A stretch of DNA of 64,000 nucleotides, taken from positions 682,001 to 746,000 of the forward strand of contig OZ251240.1 of the NCBI GenBank assembly GCA_965240325.2, in the 5' to 3' direction. The DNA comes from Rebecca billardiae RCC1528. Lineage: Eukaryota; Protista; Haptophyta. Positions 24,440 through 32,318 of the stretch are shown here, piece by piece. Every line of letters begins with the position of its first letter. Within the stretch, counting starts at the first letter, position 1. The notes under the pieces are model-generated. The model worked only from the letters and a program-made list of their open reading frames with translations, was not told the DNA's origin and made no database searches. The translations under genes were made by a program, and so were the position numbers.

Positions 24440-25184
<745 letters not shown>

Positions 25185-26953: not shown

Positions 26954-27988
26954 ATGTGGATGGTTCAGGCATCAAAGTGGCTGCGCGGCGACTGCGAGCC
27001 CGAGCGGGCTGTTCACAATGCTGTGAACGCTGCGGCCGTGGCCTCGGGCTCCGACGGTGATGCCGGCGCAGCGCAGGGCGTGTGGCGCGACGACAAGTCT
27101 ACGATTGCCCTCGAGTCTTTTCTCGAGGACAACGTCATGCTCGACGCAGCAGTCGTTGCAGAGCTGGATCGACTGCTGATGTGCAACGCGAGCGCGGACG
27201 CGTCCACTGGAGATGGTGACGATCGTTCGCAGATGTCCCGTGGCGCCGTCGAGGTTGTCCGGCGCGCGCTCTGCGACGAGTCCGCGCCGACATCCACCGA
27301 TCCACCGCTACCGGCCACGCGCCCTTTGTCTACCTTCGCGGGCGTGGCGGCACTCCCGCAGCATCATCATCGCCATCATCCATGTGCGATGATGGCCGCG
27401 GAGGCGCTGGTGGATGCCTGCATTGCTGGCTTGCCATGCGCGCCTGTGCTGCCGCAGAGCGTCGACCCGTGGCGACCGCCCACGCTGGCCCCACCGGCCA
27501 CACCTACGCCTCGAGACGCTGTGTTCGATCGCCACATTGCGTTCGGGGAGTCGGTGCCGCTATCGACTGCTGTGGCCCATCATCATCATGAGCTCGGGGA
27601 CCTGGGCGTGCCAGCTTTGCCCCCGCTTCCGCCGCCGCTGCCGGGCATCATCGAGCCGCCCGTGCCCCGGACGCAGCGAATGTACATCGGGGTGCGCTCC
27701 CGCCGGCCCGCGCATGGCAGCGAGAAGCGCGTAAAGCCGTACCACGGCCGCGTGCGCTTCAAGGGTAAAGAGCACTACACGAAATTCTTCTCGTCGCCGG
27801 AGGGTGCTGCGCGCGCACGCGACGCGCTCATCATCCGGCTCGGGCTCCATCACACACGCAGGCTCAACTTTCCGCCGGGCGTGATGCACGATCCCAAGCG
27901 CATGGGACGGCAAGATCCCTCCAGAAATGTCCGCTTGGGGCTGCACAGCAGCGCATCGCCCGGCGTCCACCACCACCCTGTCGCGTAA
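26954..27988 (+). CDS. AP2/ERF-domain transcription factor
   Basis: C-terminal YIGVR...KPYHGRVRFKGKEHYTKFFSSPEGAARARDALIIRLG...LNFP. The start is uncertain. Confidence 0.8.
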   Translation: MWMVQASKWLRGDCEPERAVHNAVNAAAVASGSDGDAGAAQGVWRDDKSTIALESFLEDNVMLDAAVVAELDRLLMCNASADASTGDGDDRSQMSRGAVEVVRRALCDESAPTSTDPPLPATRPLSTFAGVAALPQHHHRHHPCAMMAAEALVDACIAGLPCAPVLPQSVDPWRPPTLAPPATPTPRDAVFDRHIAFGESVPLSTAVAHHHHELGDLGVPALPPLPPPLPGIIEPPVPRTQRMYIGVRSRRPAHGSEKRVKPYHGRVRFKGKEHYTKFFSSPEGAARARDALIIRLGLHHTRRLNFPPGVMHDPKRMGRQDPSRNVRLGLHSSASPGVHHHPVA

Positions 27989-28270: not shown

Positions 28271-30890
28271 TCATCGCGCGGGCGTGCTGGCTGCTGCCGA
28301 CGATACCGGCCCTCCTCCGATATAGCTGTTGCTGCTGTTGTCCAGCGTGGCTTGGCTCGGGTGGCGCGTGCTGTTGGTCGAAGTGACTTCGCTCGGGCGG
28401 CGCGTGCTGTTGGTGGTGACGTAGGTGCTGACGCTGTTGCTGCGCATGCCGGCCGCCTCGCCCTCGAGAGCGCGCGGGGGTGGCGACGCTGCGGCGGTGA
28501 CGGCCGAGCCCGTGGCGCTCACTCCGCTCAGCGCTCGCTTCTGCCACCCCGACTGCGAGTTCTGCCGCTGCGCAGCGCCGAGCGAGCCGTCCGAGCAGCC
28601 GACGGTGCTCCTGCTGAGCCCGTCGATGGAGAGCTCAGGCAGGCTCGAGGCGGTGCGCTCCTCGAGCACCTCGGCGACGAGGCCCTCGCCCTCGACCGAG
28701 CGCCACCCGAAGATGATCCGACCGGCCGCGCACGTGAGCAGCAGCACGTCCCCCTGCACAGGCGGCGCCATCTCACCGGCGTCCAAGTACTCTTGCTGCG
28801 CGGCGCGCGCACGGCGGGCGCGGCGGGGCACGGCCGGGTGGGCAGGCGCACGCGAGGGCGCCGGGGGGGGGGGGAGTGGGCAAAACGTGGCAGCCGGCTG
28901 TCGAGTGCCCCCACCGCGCGCGCACAGCCGGGCACGGAGTGCGCATTGGGCGTCCCGCCGCCCTCCGCGCTGCCGAGCGCGCGCGCATCGCATCGCGCCC
29001 GAGCGCGCTCGCACCGGGTCGCCAAAGCGGCAGCCCACGTCTCGGAAGACCTCGCAGCCCTTCTCGAAGGCCTTGGCGATGTTGGGCGCGCGCGTGGCGT
29101 GCGCCTCGGCCGCGCCGAGGTCCGCGCCGATCGAGTCCGCGAAGCCCGAGGAGAAGTAGCGCGCGGCGGAGTCCTCGGTGATGGTCGCCCAGCAGATCAC
29201 CTTGAGGTGCGCGAGCGCGGGCTCGCGCAGGATCGCCAGGCCGAGGTCGAGCGTGAGGCACGCGTTGAGGAAGACGCACATGAGCTTGGCGGCCGGCGCG
29301 GCGCTGGCCTCGCGCAGCATCGCGATGAAGTGGTCGGCGGACGAGCTCACGTCCACGCGCGAGTTGTCCGACTCGAACGCGAGCGCGGACACGCCGTACC
29401 CGGGCGAGAGCGTGTGCCCGGAGAACATGATGATGCGCGGGCTGAAGCGGAGCACCGACTCCTTGGCGTCGGAGAAGGTGGCGGCCGGGACGATCTCGAG
29501 GTGCACGCGCGGCACCGAGCGCACGAGGAACTTGAGCTCCTGCCCGAGCTTGAGCGGCATCAGCCCGAGCTCGCGCTGCTGCCGCCTCGAGAGCGTCGGG
29601 TTCGAGAAGATGCCGAGCAGCTCGATCCGACCGCCGGCGATCATCGAGCGCTTCTCTTCAAGCTCAAGCTGCGTGCGGAACGCCTGCACGAACGCGAGCC
29701 GCTCGAAGCGGTTGACGCGCCGCGCGCCGTACAGCATCAGCACGACGGCGATCAGCGAGATCGCGAGCGACTTGAGGATCGGGTCGTGCCGGCACGCGCG
29801 GCCGCACGGCAGCGACGGCTCGCGCCGCCAGAGCGCGTGCACCTCCGCGAGCAGCACCGCCAGGAACTCGGCGTACAGCGCAACGCACGTGAGCGCCGTG
29901 TGCACAAAGTCGAGCGCCGAGTTGAGCAGCACCATGATGACGTACAGGAGGAGCCAGACGAGCTCGTACAGGACGAACTGGCTGCACTGCGCGCGAGGCC
30001 GCGAGCAGGGCGGCGGGGCACCGCGCACGCGCACGCGCGCGTCAGCTCAGCGCGCGCCGCGCTCGGCGAGCCGCGCGCGCCGCGGCACGCGCCGCTCACG
30101 TTGAGCTCGCCGATGGCCTCGTCGAGCGGGCGCAGCGAGGTGATGACGAGCAGAAAGGTGGTGAGCGCGCTGGCCATCACGAGCGGCCTCCAGAACCGCC
30201 TGACCACCCGCGTGTGCAGCGCCGCGCTCGCGCCGAGCAGCAGGCAGCACGGCAGCCACGCGTGCGACGCCTTGATCAGCGCCGACACGTGCTTGTACGG
30301 CTCGGCGATCTCGAGGAAGACGACCTCGTAGAAGATGGCCGCTGCGCAGAGCAGGAGGCGGCGCTGCACCTTGGAGGCCTGCAGCTCCGTCGTGTACTGA
30401 TGGTAGGCCATCTCGACGCTCGAGCTGCCGACGAACTGGTTGGTGTACGAGGACTGCCGCAGGCTCTCGTGCCGGTCCGACTTTGTGGTCGTCACGAGCG
30501 CGCGCACGATGGCGTCGGGCTCGCGCGGGTCGACGAGATGGAGGCGCCAGCCGCGGCACGAGCAGTCGGCAGGCTTGCCCAGCTCCGCGCGGCCGTACCC
30601 TCCGGTGCGAAGCCGCGCAAGCGTCCCGGCCGGCGAGCGCACGCCCGCGTGCAATTCGGCCGGCGAAGGCATGTCGGTCACGCCGAGGCCGACCACCGGC
30701 GAGGCCATGGCCTGAGCCGATGGGAGCTCGACAGCGCTGCGGCGGAGCGAGTCGGCGGCGCGGTTGGCCGCCTGAAACTCCCTCTCCGCCGCCTCGATCC
30801 GATTGTCGAGCCCAAGCGCGACGGGCGCGGCGGTCGCCATGGAAATATACCCGGCCAACGTCCCGCCGCGCTCGGTTTTCAAGCACGACA
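28271..30890 (-). CDS. 6-TM membrane protein with a cytosolic CHAT (caspase-like, clan CD) domain; introns about 29987-30100 and 28797-29014
   Basis: FVGSSSVEMAYHQY followed by six hydrophobic segments, then ELLGIFSNP...LKLGQEL, PRIIMFSGH, LAFE and CVFLNAC (His/Cys dyad motifs), and VICW...EDSAA..FS.GF. Confidence 0.8.
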
Positions 30891-30956
30891 TAGGAACGCC
30901 GTCGCCACGTGTTTACCCGCGATCGAGACCCCGCGCGCTCTCGGTCGGCCGACATC

Positions 30957-31849
30957 ATGCTCGCCGCGCTCTCGCTCATCGGCCTGGCCTTCCATGGCTC
31001 CGGGATCGCGACCGGCAGGTCGCGCGTGTCGATGGCGATTGCCACCGACGCCGCCGGCAGGCGCGTCGCCTCCGACGTCACGGAGCTGATTGGCGGCACG
31101 CCGCTCGTCCGGCTGAACCGAGTGACCGACGGGATCGACGGCACAATCCTGGCCAAGCTCGAGTCGATGGAGCCGTGCAACAGCGTGAAGGATCGGATCG
31201 GGTACTCCATGATCGCCGAGGCCGAGAAGCGTGGCGACATCAAGCCTGGCGTCACCAAGCTCGTCGAGCCCACGTCGGGCAACACGGGAATCGCGCTCGC
31301 AATGGTGGCCGCGGCGAAGGGGTATGATATCACGCTCACGATGCCCGCCTCGATGAGCCTTGAGCGCCGCGTGATGCTCAAGGCGTTCGGCGCGAAGCTC
31401 GTGCTCACGCCCGCCGCGAAGGGCATGAAGGGCGCCATCGCCAAGGCGGAGGAGATCGTGCAGAAGGAGAACGCTTACATGCTGCAGCAGTTTGCAAACC
31501 CGGACAACCCCAAGGTCCACCGGTGCGCGCGGCCCGAGCGGCGGCGAAGGGGCGGCGAGCGCGGGCGTGCACCGCGCTGCCCGCCGCACGCGTTCGGCGT
31601 CCGGCCGCACGACTCACCACGCCGGCGCGCCTCCCGCTCCACGCGCGCCGCGCGCGCTCGGCGTGCGCAGCGAGACGACGGGCCCCGAGATCTGGGCGGA
31701 CACGAAGGGCAACTTTGACTTCTTCGTCGGCGGCGTGGGGACGGGCGGGACGGTCACGGGCTGCGCGCAGTACCTCAAGCCGCTGAAGCCCGAGCTCAAG
31801 TTCGTCGCGGTCGAGCCGGTCGAGAGCGCCGTGCTGTCGGGCGGCGCGC

Positions 31850-31886
<37 letters not shown>

Positions 31887-32318
31887 TGTGCCGGACAACG
31901 CAGACACGTCGCTCTTCGACGAGGTGGTGCAGGTGTCGGGCGAGGACGCGATCGGGATGGCGCGCCGCCTGGCCGCAGAGGAGGGGCTGATGGTCGGCAT
32001 CAGCTCGGGCGCGTCGGTGCTCGCGTCGATGGAGATCCTCAAGAAGCCAGAGAACAAGGGCAAGGTGCGGCAGCGCGCGCGCCGTGCGCGCGCGCCGCGC
32101 GCGGGCACGCCCATGGCGGGGCGCGCAAGCGCAGGCGGGCCACACGCGCGCGCCCGCGCGTGACCTCGGGCGCGCCGTGTGCACCCGCCGCGCCGTGGCG
32201 CGCGCAGACGGTCGTGTGCATCATCCCGTCCTTTGGAGAGCGCTACCTCTCGACCGCCCTCTACGAGAACCTCTTCGCCGAGGCCAGCGAGCAGCAGCCT
32301 GAGGAGGTGGACGTCTGA
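30957..32318 (+). CDS. cysK: Cysteine synthase / O-acetylserine(thiol)lyase, plastid-targeted; introns 31523-31670 and 32065-32207
   Basis: [54 protein letters not shown] and [10 protein letters not shown]. Bipartite leader [12 protein letters not shown]. Confidence 0.97.

What the first reader, a model, noticed from the sequence alone, without database searches (positions are those of the whole stretch)
28271..30890. Adenylyl-cyclase-type 6TM module fused to a CHAT caspase-like protease
Seen: pre-membrane motif FVGSSSVEMAYHQY, six TM segments, a helical linker RRVNRFERLAF...LELEEKR, then a CHAT-like domain with intact FSGH and FLNAC motifs. Established: F-x-S-x-x-LE-x-x-Y-x-x-Y plus 6TM plus an R..F helix is the membrane module of class III adenylyl cyclases. 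CHAT domains are clan CD His/Cys proteases, usually linked to TPR or STAND domains in bacterial conflict and cell-death systems. Inference: a membrane receptor whose output is proteolysis rather than cAMP, a candidate previously undescribed algal signalling or immune/cell-death component.
Basis: partly seen in the sequence, partly recalled or inferred. Interest (0 to 1): 0.8.

Follow-up and report, generated by a model that had tools for sequence, protein, structure and literature searches.

The report
Membrane sensor fused to caspase-like protease
This alga's gene encodes a six-helix membrane module, shaped like those that drive nucleotide cyclases, fused to an apparently intact caspase-like (CHAT) protease; the design is shared across haptophyte algae, I found no paper describing it, and its function is untested.

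Summary
A three-exon minus-strand gene (30891-28271, about 762 aa) encodes an N-terminal cytosolic region, six TM helices, a helix continuing from TM6, and a caspase-like domain.

The fusion does not depend on splicing. Exon 2 alone is one open frame with TM4-6, the linker and the whole catalytic domain.

The C-terminal domain is a divergent CHAT protease:
- Pfam misses the window protein.
- The family profile hits the solved SAVED-CHAT protease (E 5.9e-9).
- His455 and Cys507 align with its proven dyad.
- The AlphaFold model (pLDDT 82) matches SAVED-CHAT first and caspases next.

The 6TM module has no detectable sequence relative outside this family. A model built on a 53%-identical homolog (pLDDT 90.6) matches best the 6TM domains of diguanylate cyclase ImcA (Z 17.2) and adenylyl cyclases AC9 and AC5 (Z 13.8, 13.3). 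"Cyclase-type" is therefore supported by fold only.

The family has about 100 representatives. All named members are haptophytes, including Emiliania huxleyi, Prymnesium and Diacronema. The module is always paired with CHAT and never with a cyclase.

Receptor function, substrate and any immune role remain inference. The scan had already noted a paralog with the same reading elsewhere in this genome.

The parts
28271..30891 (-). Whole gene: three exons, two GT..AG introns, about 762 codons plus stop
   Evidence: ORFs and sequence. Exon translations. Junctions agree with Diacronema KAG8470606 and with P0004. Coordinates computed.
30100..30891 (-). Exon 1 (264 aa): N-terminal cytosolic region with the conserved LHLVDP motif (30543-30526), the pre-TM motif, and TM1-TM3
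   Evidence: The family TM profile matches 30489-30097 at E 1.5e-52.
30394..30435 (-). Pre-TM1 conserved motif FVGSSSVEMAYHQY. Family consensus: N-x-F-x-G-x(4)-E ... Q.
   Evidence: N18, F20, G22, E27 and Q38 are nearly invariant in alignment A2. In the model this stretch packs at the cytosolic face before the long TM1 helix.
30301..30363 (-). TM1
   Evidence: Hydropathy. Helix H24-62 in the model of the homolog.
30202..30261 (-). TM2 (weakly hydrophobic in the window protein)
   Evidence: Helix H71-91 in the model of the homolog. Alignment A2.
30133..30189 (-). TM3, preceded by the invariant W-R of the cytosolic TM2-3 loop
   Evidence: (W101 invariant).
29987..30099 (-). Intron 1 (113 nt, GTGAGC...GCAG, phase 0)
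   Evidence: splice sites. Frame shift between the two ORFs.
29015..29986 (-). Exon 2 (324 aa): TM4-TM6, linker helix and the complete CHAT catalytic domain in one uninterrupted frame
   Evidence: TM profile matches 29992-29636 at E 9e-44, and CHAT profile matches 29650-29009 at E 5e-99.
29915..29980 (-). TM4, ending in the conserved N-x-A-L-D-F cytosolic turn
   Evidence: (L159 invariant, D160 nearly invariant).
29834..29902 (-). TM5
29723..29779 (-). TM6
29648..29722 (-). Cytosolic helix continuing from TM6 (RRVNRFERLAF...LELEEKR). It is the putative signal-transmitting and dimerising helix.
   Evidence: N227, R228, F229, E230, R231 and F234 are nearly invariant. TM6 and this stretch form one continuous helix, H202-251, in the model. 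The structural alignments to AC9 and AC5 run through it.
29015..29650 (-). CHAT (clan CD caspase-like) protease domain, aa 377-588
   Evidence: Family profile against PDB 8tl0 SAVED-CHAT, E 5.9e-9. AF2 pLDDT 82. Foldseek 8tl0 at E 3e-9 and TM 0.69, then CED-3 and caspase-9. The nearest Atlas shapes outside the family are all CHAT clusters.
29414..29416 (-). Putative catalytic His455 (in FSGH)
   Evidence: Invariant. It follows strand E73-77 of the model. It aligns with His375 of SAVED-CHAT, whose mutation abolishes activity (bioRxiv 10.1101/2023.06.23.546230).
29258..29260 (-). Putative catalytic Cys507 (in FLNAC)
   Evidence: Invariant. It follows strand E125-129. It aligns with Cys422 of SAVED-CHAT.
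28796..29014 (-). Intron 2 (219 nt, GTGCGA...GCAG, phase 0)
   Evidence: The junction FGDP|QEYLDAGE matches FGDP|QPYLDAGE in KAG8470606 and P0004.
28274..28795 (-). Exon 3 (174 aa): conserved PPVQGDVLLL stretch, then a Ser/Thr-rich, probably disordered tail
   Evidence: The CHAT-family profile's C-terminal part matches 28807-28718. Alignment.

Best explanation
The gene encodes a polytopic membrane protein of a haptophyte-specific family. Six TM helices adopt the fold of the 6TM signalling modules that normally sit in front of nucleotide cyclases. TM6 continues without a break into a cytosolic helix, and that helix leads directly into a divergent but catalytically intact CHAT (clan CD, caspase-like) cysteine protease.

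Shown here:
- the gene model;
- the single-exon fusion;
- the CHAT homology and fold;
- the conserved and aligned His/Cys dyad;
- the cyclase-anchor-like fold of the 6TM module;
- the exclusive pairing of the two modules across haptophytes.

Inferred:
- Both termini are cytosolic.
- The protein works as a homodimer, like ImcA and Rv1625c.
- A signal perceived within or at the membrane, most plausibly a lipid or small hydrophobic ligand because the outer loops are short, shifts the TM6 helices.
- That shift rearranges or brings together the two CHAT domains and switches on cleavage of an unknown cytosolic substrate.
For: Gene and fusion:
- Searches give the model, and searches confirm the junctions.
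- Exon 2 is one ORF holding TM4-6, the linker and CHAT.
- The complete Emiliania huxleyi MMETSP transcript P0009 carries both modules.

CHAT domain:
- The family profile hits SAVED-CHAT 8tl0 at E 5.9e-9 across the His, Cys and following helix motifs.
- The aligned residues are the mutationally proven H375/C422.
- Model pLDDT is 82 and pTM 0.82.
- Foldseek ranks 8tl0 first (E 3e-9, TM 0.69), then CED-3 and caspase-9.
- The nearest Atlas shapes are CHAT clusters at TM ~0.7 and rmsd 2.3-3.0.
- His and Cys are invariant in all 31 representatives that cover them.

6TM module:
- The model of P0004:55-310 has pLDDT 90.6.
- VIA-align against 48,161 chains gives ImcA at Z 17.2 (223 aligned, rmsd 3.1), AC9 at Z 13.8 and AC5 at Z 13.3. 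The next, unrelated rows are at 10.5 or below.
- Foldseek gives TM 0.54-0.62 for the same proteins, against about 0.2-0.3 for unrelated rows.
- Atlas shape search gives a bacterial Guanylate_cyc/MASE8 cluster at TM 0.76, another bacterial cyclase cluster at 0.72 and AC9 at 0.73. Sensor kinases and GGDEF proteins also appear.

Conservation sits on the cytosolic face: the pre-TM1 motif, W-R, A-L-D-F and R-x-N-R-F-E-R-x-x-F. This fits coupling to the cytosolic domain.

Precedents:
- 6TM anchors act as exchangeable receptor modules (eLife 2016, PMC4821796).
- SAVED-CHAT is activated by oligomerisation.
Against: - No sequence-level homology of the 6TM module to any cyclase anchor was found.
- For all-helical models the tool warns that Z below about 13 can be a generic arrangement. 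The AC matches are only just above that.
- The TM model was made on a 53%-identical homolog, not on the window protein itself, because an intron splits the module.
- Pfam's CHAT model does not hit the window protein at E<=1. It reaches threshold only marginally in one relative, at 24.7 against 24 bits.
- The residue after the catalytic His is Thr or Ser in nearly all members that carry the motif, and never the Gly that I recall (from memory, not checked here) as usual in clan CD proteases.
- There is no transcript evidence for this organism; no RNA run was listed.
- No ligand, substrate, dimer or activity has been shown. Topology rests on a modest positive-inside bias and on analogy.
Confidence: 0.6

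Rival explanations
1. Constitutive membrane-tethered protease. The 6TM bundle serves only as an anchor and dimerisation scaffold that places an always-active CHAT protease at a particular membrane for local processing. Nothing is sensed.
For: - Outer loops are very short and no ligand-binding ectodomain exists.
- Conserved residues lie on the cytosolic face rather than in a membrane-core pocket.
- The function of cyclase membrane anchors beyond anchoring is itself still debated (PMC9552081).
Against: - A six-helix bundle with a strongly conserved juxtamembrane network and a rigid TM6-to-domain helix is more than tethering needs.
- The same fold is coupled to regulated outputs (cyclases, GGDEF, histidine kinases) in every structural neighbour.
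- Known CHAT proteases are tightly regulated.
- An unregulated caspase-like protease would probably be harmful.
Confidence: 0.25
2. Pseudoprotease. The CHAT-like domain has lost catalysis and acts as a binding or scaffolding domain, like some caspase-fold pseudoenzymes, on a membrane platform.
For: - The Gly that I recall (from memory) as following the catalytic His in clan CD enzymes is replaced by Thr or Ser in nearly all members carrying the motif.
- The domain is too divergent for Pfam's CHAT model.
Against: - His and Cys are invariant in all 31 covering representatives, down to about 38% identity, together with the surrounding strands.
- They align with the proven dyad of SAVED-CHAT.
- The oxyanion contact made by the residue after His is, to my knowledge, a backbone amide, so a side-chain change need not abolish it.
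Confidence: 0.1
3. Annotation artefact. The membrane part and the CHAT part belong to separate genes or transcripts.
For: - No RNA run was listed for this organism.
- Exon 1 (TM1-3) is joined to exon 2 only by a predicted intron.
Against: - TM4-6, the linker and the full CHAT domain lie in one uninterrupted 324-codon frame.
- The predicted junctions reproduce those of an independently annotated Diacronema protein.
- Complete transcripts from E. huxleyi, Chrysochromulina rotalis and Haptolina carry both modules.
Confidence: 0.02

Closest known systems
SAVED-CHAT protease of Haliangium ochraceum (PDB 8tl0; type III-B CRISPR/CBASS)
   Same: It is the closest solved relative of the C-terminal domain by sequence profile (E 5.9e-9) and by fold (TM 0.69). 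The PAAT, G-H and L-N-A-C motifs are shared. The catalytic His/Cys align. A sensor domain sits N-terminal to the CHAT domain, and the protease is activated by sensor-driven oligomerisation.
   Different: Its sensor is a soluble cyclic-oligonucleotide-binding SAVED domain, not a 6TM membrane module. It is bacterial. It has His-Gly where this family has His-Thr/Ser. Identity is only about 21%.
Membrane domains of class III adenylyl cyclases (AC9 6r3q, AC5 8sl3, AC8 8buz; Rv1625c 7yzi)
   Same: Six TM helices with short loops, a conserved short element just before TM1, and TM6 running on into a cytosolic helix that carries the signal to the output domain. Predicted-fold matches are Z 13.8 and 13.3 over 202-216 residues at rmsd about 3.1. 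The pre-TM1 invariant element in mammalian ACs is described in PMC9552081.
   Different: No detectable sequence similarity. No cyclase-transducer element and no cyclase catalytic domain in any family member. The match to Rv1625c is weak (Z 8.7). The linker to the output domain is much shorter, about 25-30 residues.
ImcA, a 6TM-GGDEF diguanylate cyclase of Pseudomonas aeruginosa (PDB 8wcn)
   Same: It is the best structural match of the 6TM module (Z 17.2, 223 residues, rmsd 3.1, covering the model from residue 5 to 256). It is a homodimer with a 6TM domain followed by a catalytic domain, and the TM domain is needed for activity (PMC10904736).
   Different: The output is c-di-GMP synthesis, joined by a flexible hinge. 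It is bacterial. No sequence similarity was detected.
DdvA, a transmembrane anti-sigma factor with a CHAT domain (Myxococcus xanthus)
   Same: It is a precedent for a CHAT domain on a membrane-spanning signalling protein (PMC11506125, title and abstract seen).
   Different: It is not a 6TM cyclase-type module, and it belongs to a bacterial anti-sigma/ECF sigma pair. I did not read the paper beyond the abstract, so details were not compared.

Membership tests
CHAT domain (Pfam PF12770; clan CD cysteine peptidases) | Significant sequence homology to bona fide CHAT domains | tested here: met
   The family profile hits the solved SAVED-CHAT (8tl0) at E 5.9e-9 over 113 residues. Caveat: the window protein alone gives no Pfam hit at E<=1. 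Only 3 of 14 and 3 of 29 relatives hit PF12770, and the best detailed hit is 24.7 bits against a cutoff of 24.
CHAT domain (Pfam PF12770; clan CD cysteine peptidases) | Caspase-hemoglobinase alpha/beta fold | tested here: met
   AF2 model pLDDT 82 and pTM 0.82. Foldseek ranks 8tl0 first (TM 0.69, E 3e-9), then CED-3, caspase-9, caspase-7 and caspase-11. Atlas neighbours outside the family are all CHAT clusters at TM 0.69-0.71.
CHAT domain (Pfam PF12770; clan CD cysteine peptidases) | Catalytic His and Cys, each at the C-terminal end of a core beta-strand and aligned with a proven dyad | tested here: met
   His455 follows strand E73-77 and Cys507 follows strand E125-129 of the model. They align with H375 and C422 of SAVED-CHAT. 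Both are invariant in the family.
CHAT domain (Pfam PF12770; clan CD cysteine peptidases) | Clan CD signature His-Gly ... Ala-Cys (recalled from the literature, not checked here) | tested here: inconclusive
   Ala-Cys is present in the window protein, and Gly/Ser-Cys in relatives. The residue after His is Thr or Ser in nearly all members carrying the motif, and never Gly.
CHAT domain (Pfam PF12770; clan CD cysteine peptidases) | Proteolytic activity | not testable with these tools
   Needs biochemistry.
Class III adenylyl/guanylyl cyclase (membrane-bound) | Cyclase homology catalytic domain (PF00211) and cyclase-transducer element | tested here: not met
   No PF00211 hit in the window protein or in 43 family members scanned. 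The linker lacks an S/N-x-L-P centre. The protein is not a cyclase.
Cyclase-type 6TM membrane module | Six TM helices, short loops, TM6 continuing into a cytosolic helix; fold match to solved cyclase anchors | tested here: met
   Model of the homolog P0004:55-310, pLDDT 90.6. ImcA Z 17.2, AC9 Z 13.8 and AC5 Z 13.3, against 10.5 for the best unrelated row. Atlas bacterial cyclase anchors at TM 0.72-0.76. This was tested on a 53%-identical relative, not on the window protein.
Cyclase-type 6TM membrane module | Sequence homology to cyclase anchors (Pfam AC_N, MASE8 or similar) | tested here: not met
   A profile search of 1.84 billion proteins returns only this family. PDB sequence search returns nothing. 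Pfam at E<=10 shows no cyclase-anchor model. Cyclase anchors are known not to be conserved in sequence even among isoforms (PMC9552081), so this does not exclude common descent.

The most novel reading that the evidence does not exclude
The 6TM module is a lipid receptor, as has been proposed for adenylyl-cyclase anchors, and it switches on a caspase-like protease directly. In haptophytes such as Emiliania huxleyi this family, through the ortholog EMIHUDRAFT_467435, would then be a membrane sensor. It would convert a membrane-lipid danger signal, for example the virus-derived glycosphingolipids known (from my own knowledge) to trigger caspase-like activity and cell death in E. huxleyi, into proteolytic death signalling. 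That would make it a one-protein 'death receptor plus initiator caspase'.
Probability: 0.08. Interest if true: 0.9.

Novelty: new variant of a known kind. Interest (0 to 1): 0.62.

Why it matters
CHAT and caspase-like proteases are known as outputs of soluble sensors such as TPR, STAND NTPases, SAVED and Cas7-11. The 6TM module is known as the input of nucleotide cyclases, diguanylate cyclases and kinases. Here the two are wired together, so a membrane event could be turned into proteolysis in one polypeptide with no second messenger.

The family is conserved across both haptophyte classes, including the bloom-formers Emiliania huxleyi and Prymnesium parvum. In those organisms 'caspase-like activity' during viral infection and stress has been measured, but as far as I know the responsible enzymes are still debated.

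The family also offers a new handle on an old question, namely what the 6TM anchors of adenylyl cyclases sense. A protease output is easy to read out, and the module is present here in a simple, non-duplicated form.

Tried and rejected
- **Pfam on the window ORFs:** nothing at E<=1. Nothing for the N-terminal region or exon 3 either.
- **TM-module profile against PDB sequences:** only a chance zinc-transporter row at E 1.7.
- **Whole-family profile against PDB:** weak alpha-SNAP rows at E 0.04-0.1 on the pre-TM1 region. I judged these chance matches between helical regions.
- **TM-module profile against 1.84 billion proteins:** no cyclase, kinase or other output. The members that seem to lack CHAT are ORF calls running into intron read-through, with Arg/Pro/Ala-rich tails.
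- **Foldseek E-values for the TM model:** all above 0.05, so I relied on TM-score contrast and on VIA-align Z.
- **RNA evidence:** no run was listed.
- **The protein-atlas search on the TM module:** it failed because the machine was busy, and I did not repeat it.
- **Second copy in the window:** none found by six-frame profile search.
- **A TIR-like or other Rossmann-like fold for the C-terminal domain:** considered and rejected, because the top structural and sequence matches are CHAT and caspases.
- **Literature:** no paper joins CHAT with adenylyl cyclase or haptophytes, and none cites the accession numbers of relatives.
Full report
**Observation**

The region holds a real minus-strand gene. 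Two overlapping ORFs in different frames resolve into three exons:
- Exon 1, 30891-30100 (264 aa).
- Exon 2, 29986-29015 (324 aa).
- Exon 3, 28795-28274 (174 aa), with the stop at 28273-28271.

Both introns have GT..AG ends and are phase 0. The product is about 762 aa.

Their coordinates are and in the parts list. A second in-frame ATG lies at 30840.

The junctions FGDP|QEYLDAGE and ...GELN|CSQFVLYELVW reproduce those of the annotated Diacronema lutheri protein KAG8470606 (P0133) and of the spliced homolog P0004.

It cannot apply to the core of the claim, because exon 2 alone is an uninterrupted frame holding TM4, TM5, TM6, the linker helix and the entire catalytic domain.

No RNA run was listed for this organism. 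Relatives are expressed as complete transcripts that carry both modules, in Emiliania huxleyi, Chrysochromulina rotalis and Haptolina.

**The C-terminal domain**

Pfam finds nothing in the window protein even at E<=1. Only a few relatives touch the CHAT model, and the best detailed hit is 24.7 bits against a cutoff of 24.

A profile of 14 family members hits exactly one solved protein family, the SAVED-CHAT protease of Haliangium ochraceum (8tl0). The E-value is 5.9e-9 over 113 residues. The alignment runs through P-A-A-T, the His motif, the Cys motif and the following D-x-A-A-x-x-F helix.

Counting along that alignment, the aligned His and Cys are 47 residues apart. This is the same spacing as H375 and C422, the dyad whose mutation kills SAVED-CHAT.

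An AlphaFold2 model of window 29015-29650 has pLDDT 82 and pTM 0.82. It places His455 and Cys507 each at the end of a core strand.
- Foldseek ranks 8tl0 first (E 3e-9, TM 0.69), followed by CED-3 and caspases 9, 7 and 11.
- In the ESM Atlas, the nearest shapes outside the family are all bacterial CHAT clusters, at TM about 0.7 and rmsd 2.3-3.0.

His and Cys are invariant in all 31 family representatives that cover them.

One deviation deserves attention. The residue after His is Thr or Ser in nearly all members that carry the motif, and never Gly. I recall Gly as usual at this position in clan CD proteases, but I did not check that here.

**The membrane module**

A profile of the module, running from the pre-TM1 motif to the post-TM6 helix, was run against 1.84 billion representative proteins. 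It found only 100 proteins at E<=1e-3.
- Every hit that continues in frame past TM6 carries the same CHAT domain.
- The apparent exceptions end in Arg/Pro/Ala-rich intron read-through.
- None of 29 long members has a cyclase or any other Pfam output domain.
- The profile hits no cyclase in the PDB by sequence.

So there is no sequence evidence for kinship with cyclase anchors. A published comparison notes that those anchors share no sequence conservation even among mammalian isoforms. The same paper describes a short invariant element just ahead of TM1 (PMC9552081).

An intron splits the module in the window, so I modelled the contiguous homolog P0004:55-310 (53% identical to the window protein over the exon 2 region) with a 31-sequence alignment. 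The model has pLDDT 90.6 and shows six helices, with TM6 continuing as one 50-residue helix.

An exhaustive structural comparison with 48,161 chains gave these matches:

| Match | Z | Aligned residues | rmsd (Å) |
|---|---|---|---|
| ImcA, homodimeric 6TM-GGDEF diguanylate cyclase | 17.2 | 223 | 3.1 |
| Adenylyl cyclase 9 | 13.8 | 202 | 3.1 |
| Adenylyl cyclase 5 | 13.3 | 216 | 3.2 |
| Best unrelated row (designed helical proteins) | 10.5 | 173 | 4.2 |
| Rv1625c | 8.7 | 157 | 5.0 |

- Foldseek shows the same contrast, with TM 0.54-0.62 for ImcA, AC9, AC8 and AC5 against about 0.2-0.3 for unrelated rows.
- Atlas shape search puts a bacterial Guanylate_cyc/MASE8 cluster first (TM 0.76, rmsd 2.5 over 219 residues). 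Another bacterial cyclase cluster (0.72) and AC9 (0.73) follow, and sensor kinases and GGDEF/HD proteins appear lower down.

The tool warns that helical models can reach Z of about 13 by arrangement alone. The ImcA match is therefore clear, while the AC matches are only just above that level. The module is best described as a cyclase/kinase-type 6TM signalling module.

**Where the conservation lies**

The nearly invariant positions of the module are:
- the pre-TM1 N-x-F-x-G...E element;
- W-R at the TM2-3 turn;
- A-L-D-F at the TM4-5 turn;
- R-x-N-R-F-E-R-x-x-F just after TM6.

By the positive-inside rule and by analogy with cyclases, all of these are on the cytosolic face. The outer loops are short and variable. 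This fits a conserved cytosolic coupling surface next to the protease, with a divergent membrane core.

**Mechanism**

I think the most likely reading, at about 0.6, is a membrane-embedded sensor that regulates a CHAT protease. The signal would pass through the rigid TM6 helix, probably within a homodimer.

Several things support this by analogy. All structural neighbours of the module drive regulated outputs. ImcA and Rv1625c are homodimers. 6TM modules have been swapped between a quorum-sensing kinase and a cyclase with retention of ligand control (PMC4821796). The closest solved CHAT protease is switched on by sensor-driven oligomerisation.

None of this is shown for the present protein. 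The rivals are a constitutive tethered protease (about 0.25), a pseudoprotease (about 0.1) and an annotation artefact (about 0.02).

**Distribution and novelty**

Named members come only from haptophytes, of both classes:
- Diacronema lutheri and Pavlovales sp. CCMP2436;
- Prymnesium parvum (two paralogs) and a Prymnesium MAG;
- Chrysochromulina rotalis;
- Haptolina ericina and Haptolina brevifila;
- Emiliania huxleyi.

The window protein is 53-59% identical to the pavlovophyte members, so the genome is probably a pavlovophyte.

The E. huxleyi genome model EMIHUDRAFT_467435 is mis-spliced and lacks the His motif. The MMETSP transcript P0009 is complete.

UniProt auto-names several members 'CHAT domain-containing protein'. 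I found no paper that describes the architecture or cites these accessions.

The scan itself had already noted a paralog with the same reading on another piece of this genome (s1-348457). It also noted histidine kinases said to carry a similar 6TM module (s1-367872) and other CHAT architectures (s1-357902, s1-352998). I did not examine those loci. My tests on this locus independently reach the same conclusion as s1-348457.

**Verdict**

The architectural interpretation is supported, the CHAT part firmly and the cyclase-type 6TM part by fold only. The functional interpretation remains open. This is a new variant of known kinds: a known protease class with a membrane input module not previously linked to it. 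It is conserved in an ecologically important algal phylum.

Noticed in passing
window 30909-32300 (+): Head-to-head neighbour only tens of bases from the ATG at 30891. It is an intron-containing gene for a PLP-dependent enzyme of the cysteine synthase type (Pfam PALP, E 6e-37). The two genes probably share a very short bidirectional promoter region.
   Followed up: partly
window 26954-27988 (+): A 344-aa ORF downstream of the gene contains a stretch (YIGVRSRR...YHGRVRFKGKEHYTKFFSSPEGAARARDALIIRLG) that looks AP2/ERF-like by eye. Pfam gave no hit at E<=0.01.
   Followed up: partly
P0009 / P0008 / P0020 (E. huxleyi subfamily), C-terminus: This subfamily has an extra hydrophobic helix near the C-terminus (a possible seventh TM or tail anchor) that the window protein lacks. 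Most non-pavlovophyte members also carry a conserved His/Cys-rich insert (Y-L-H-P-x-H-P-H ... C-x-G-C-x-P-P-V-H-G) after the G-D-P motif. It may bind metal, and it is reduced to QEYLDAGEMAPPVQG in the window protein.
   Followed up: no
P0020 (EMIHUDRAFT_467435, Emiliania huxleyi CCMP1516): The public gene model is mis-spliced. Compared with the complete MMETSP transcript P0009, it lacks parts of the TM module and the exon with the catalytic His motif.
   Followed up: partly
window 30526-30543 (-), aa 117-122: A conserved L-H-L-V-D-P-P/R motif lies in the otherwise variable N-terminal cytosolic region. It is shared by the pavlovophyte members and, in degenerate form, by P0007 and P0013. Its function is unknown.
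   Followed up: no
window 24500-25000: A sharp drop in G+C to 0.30 within a 62-76% G+C region. I did not examine it.
   Followed up: no
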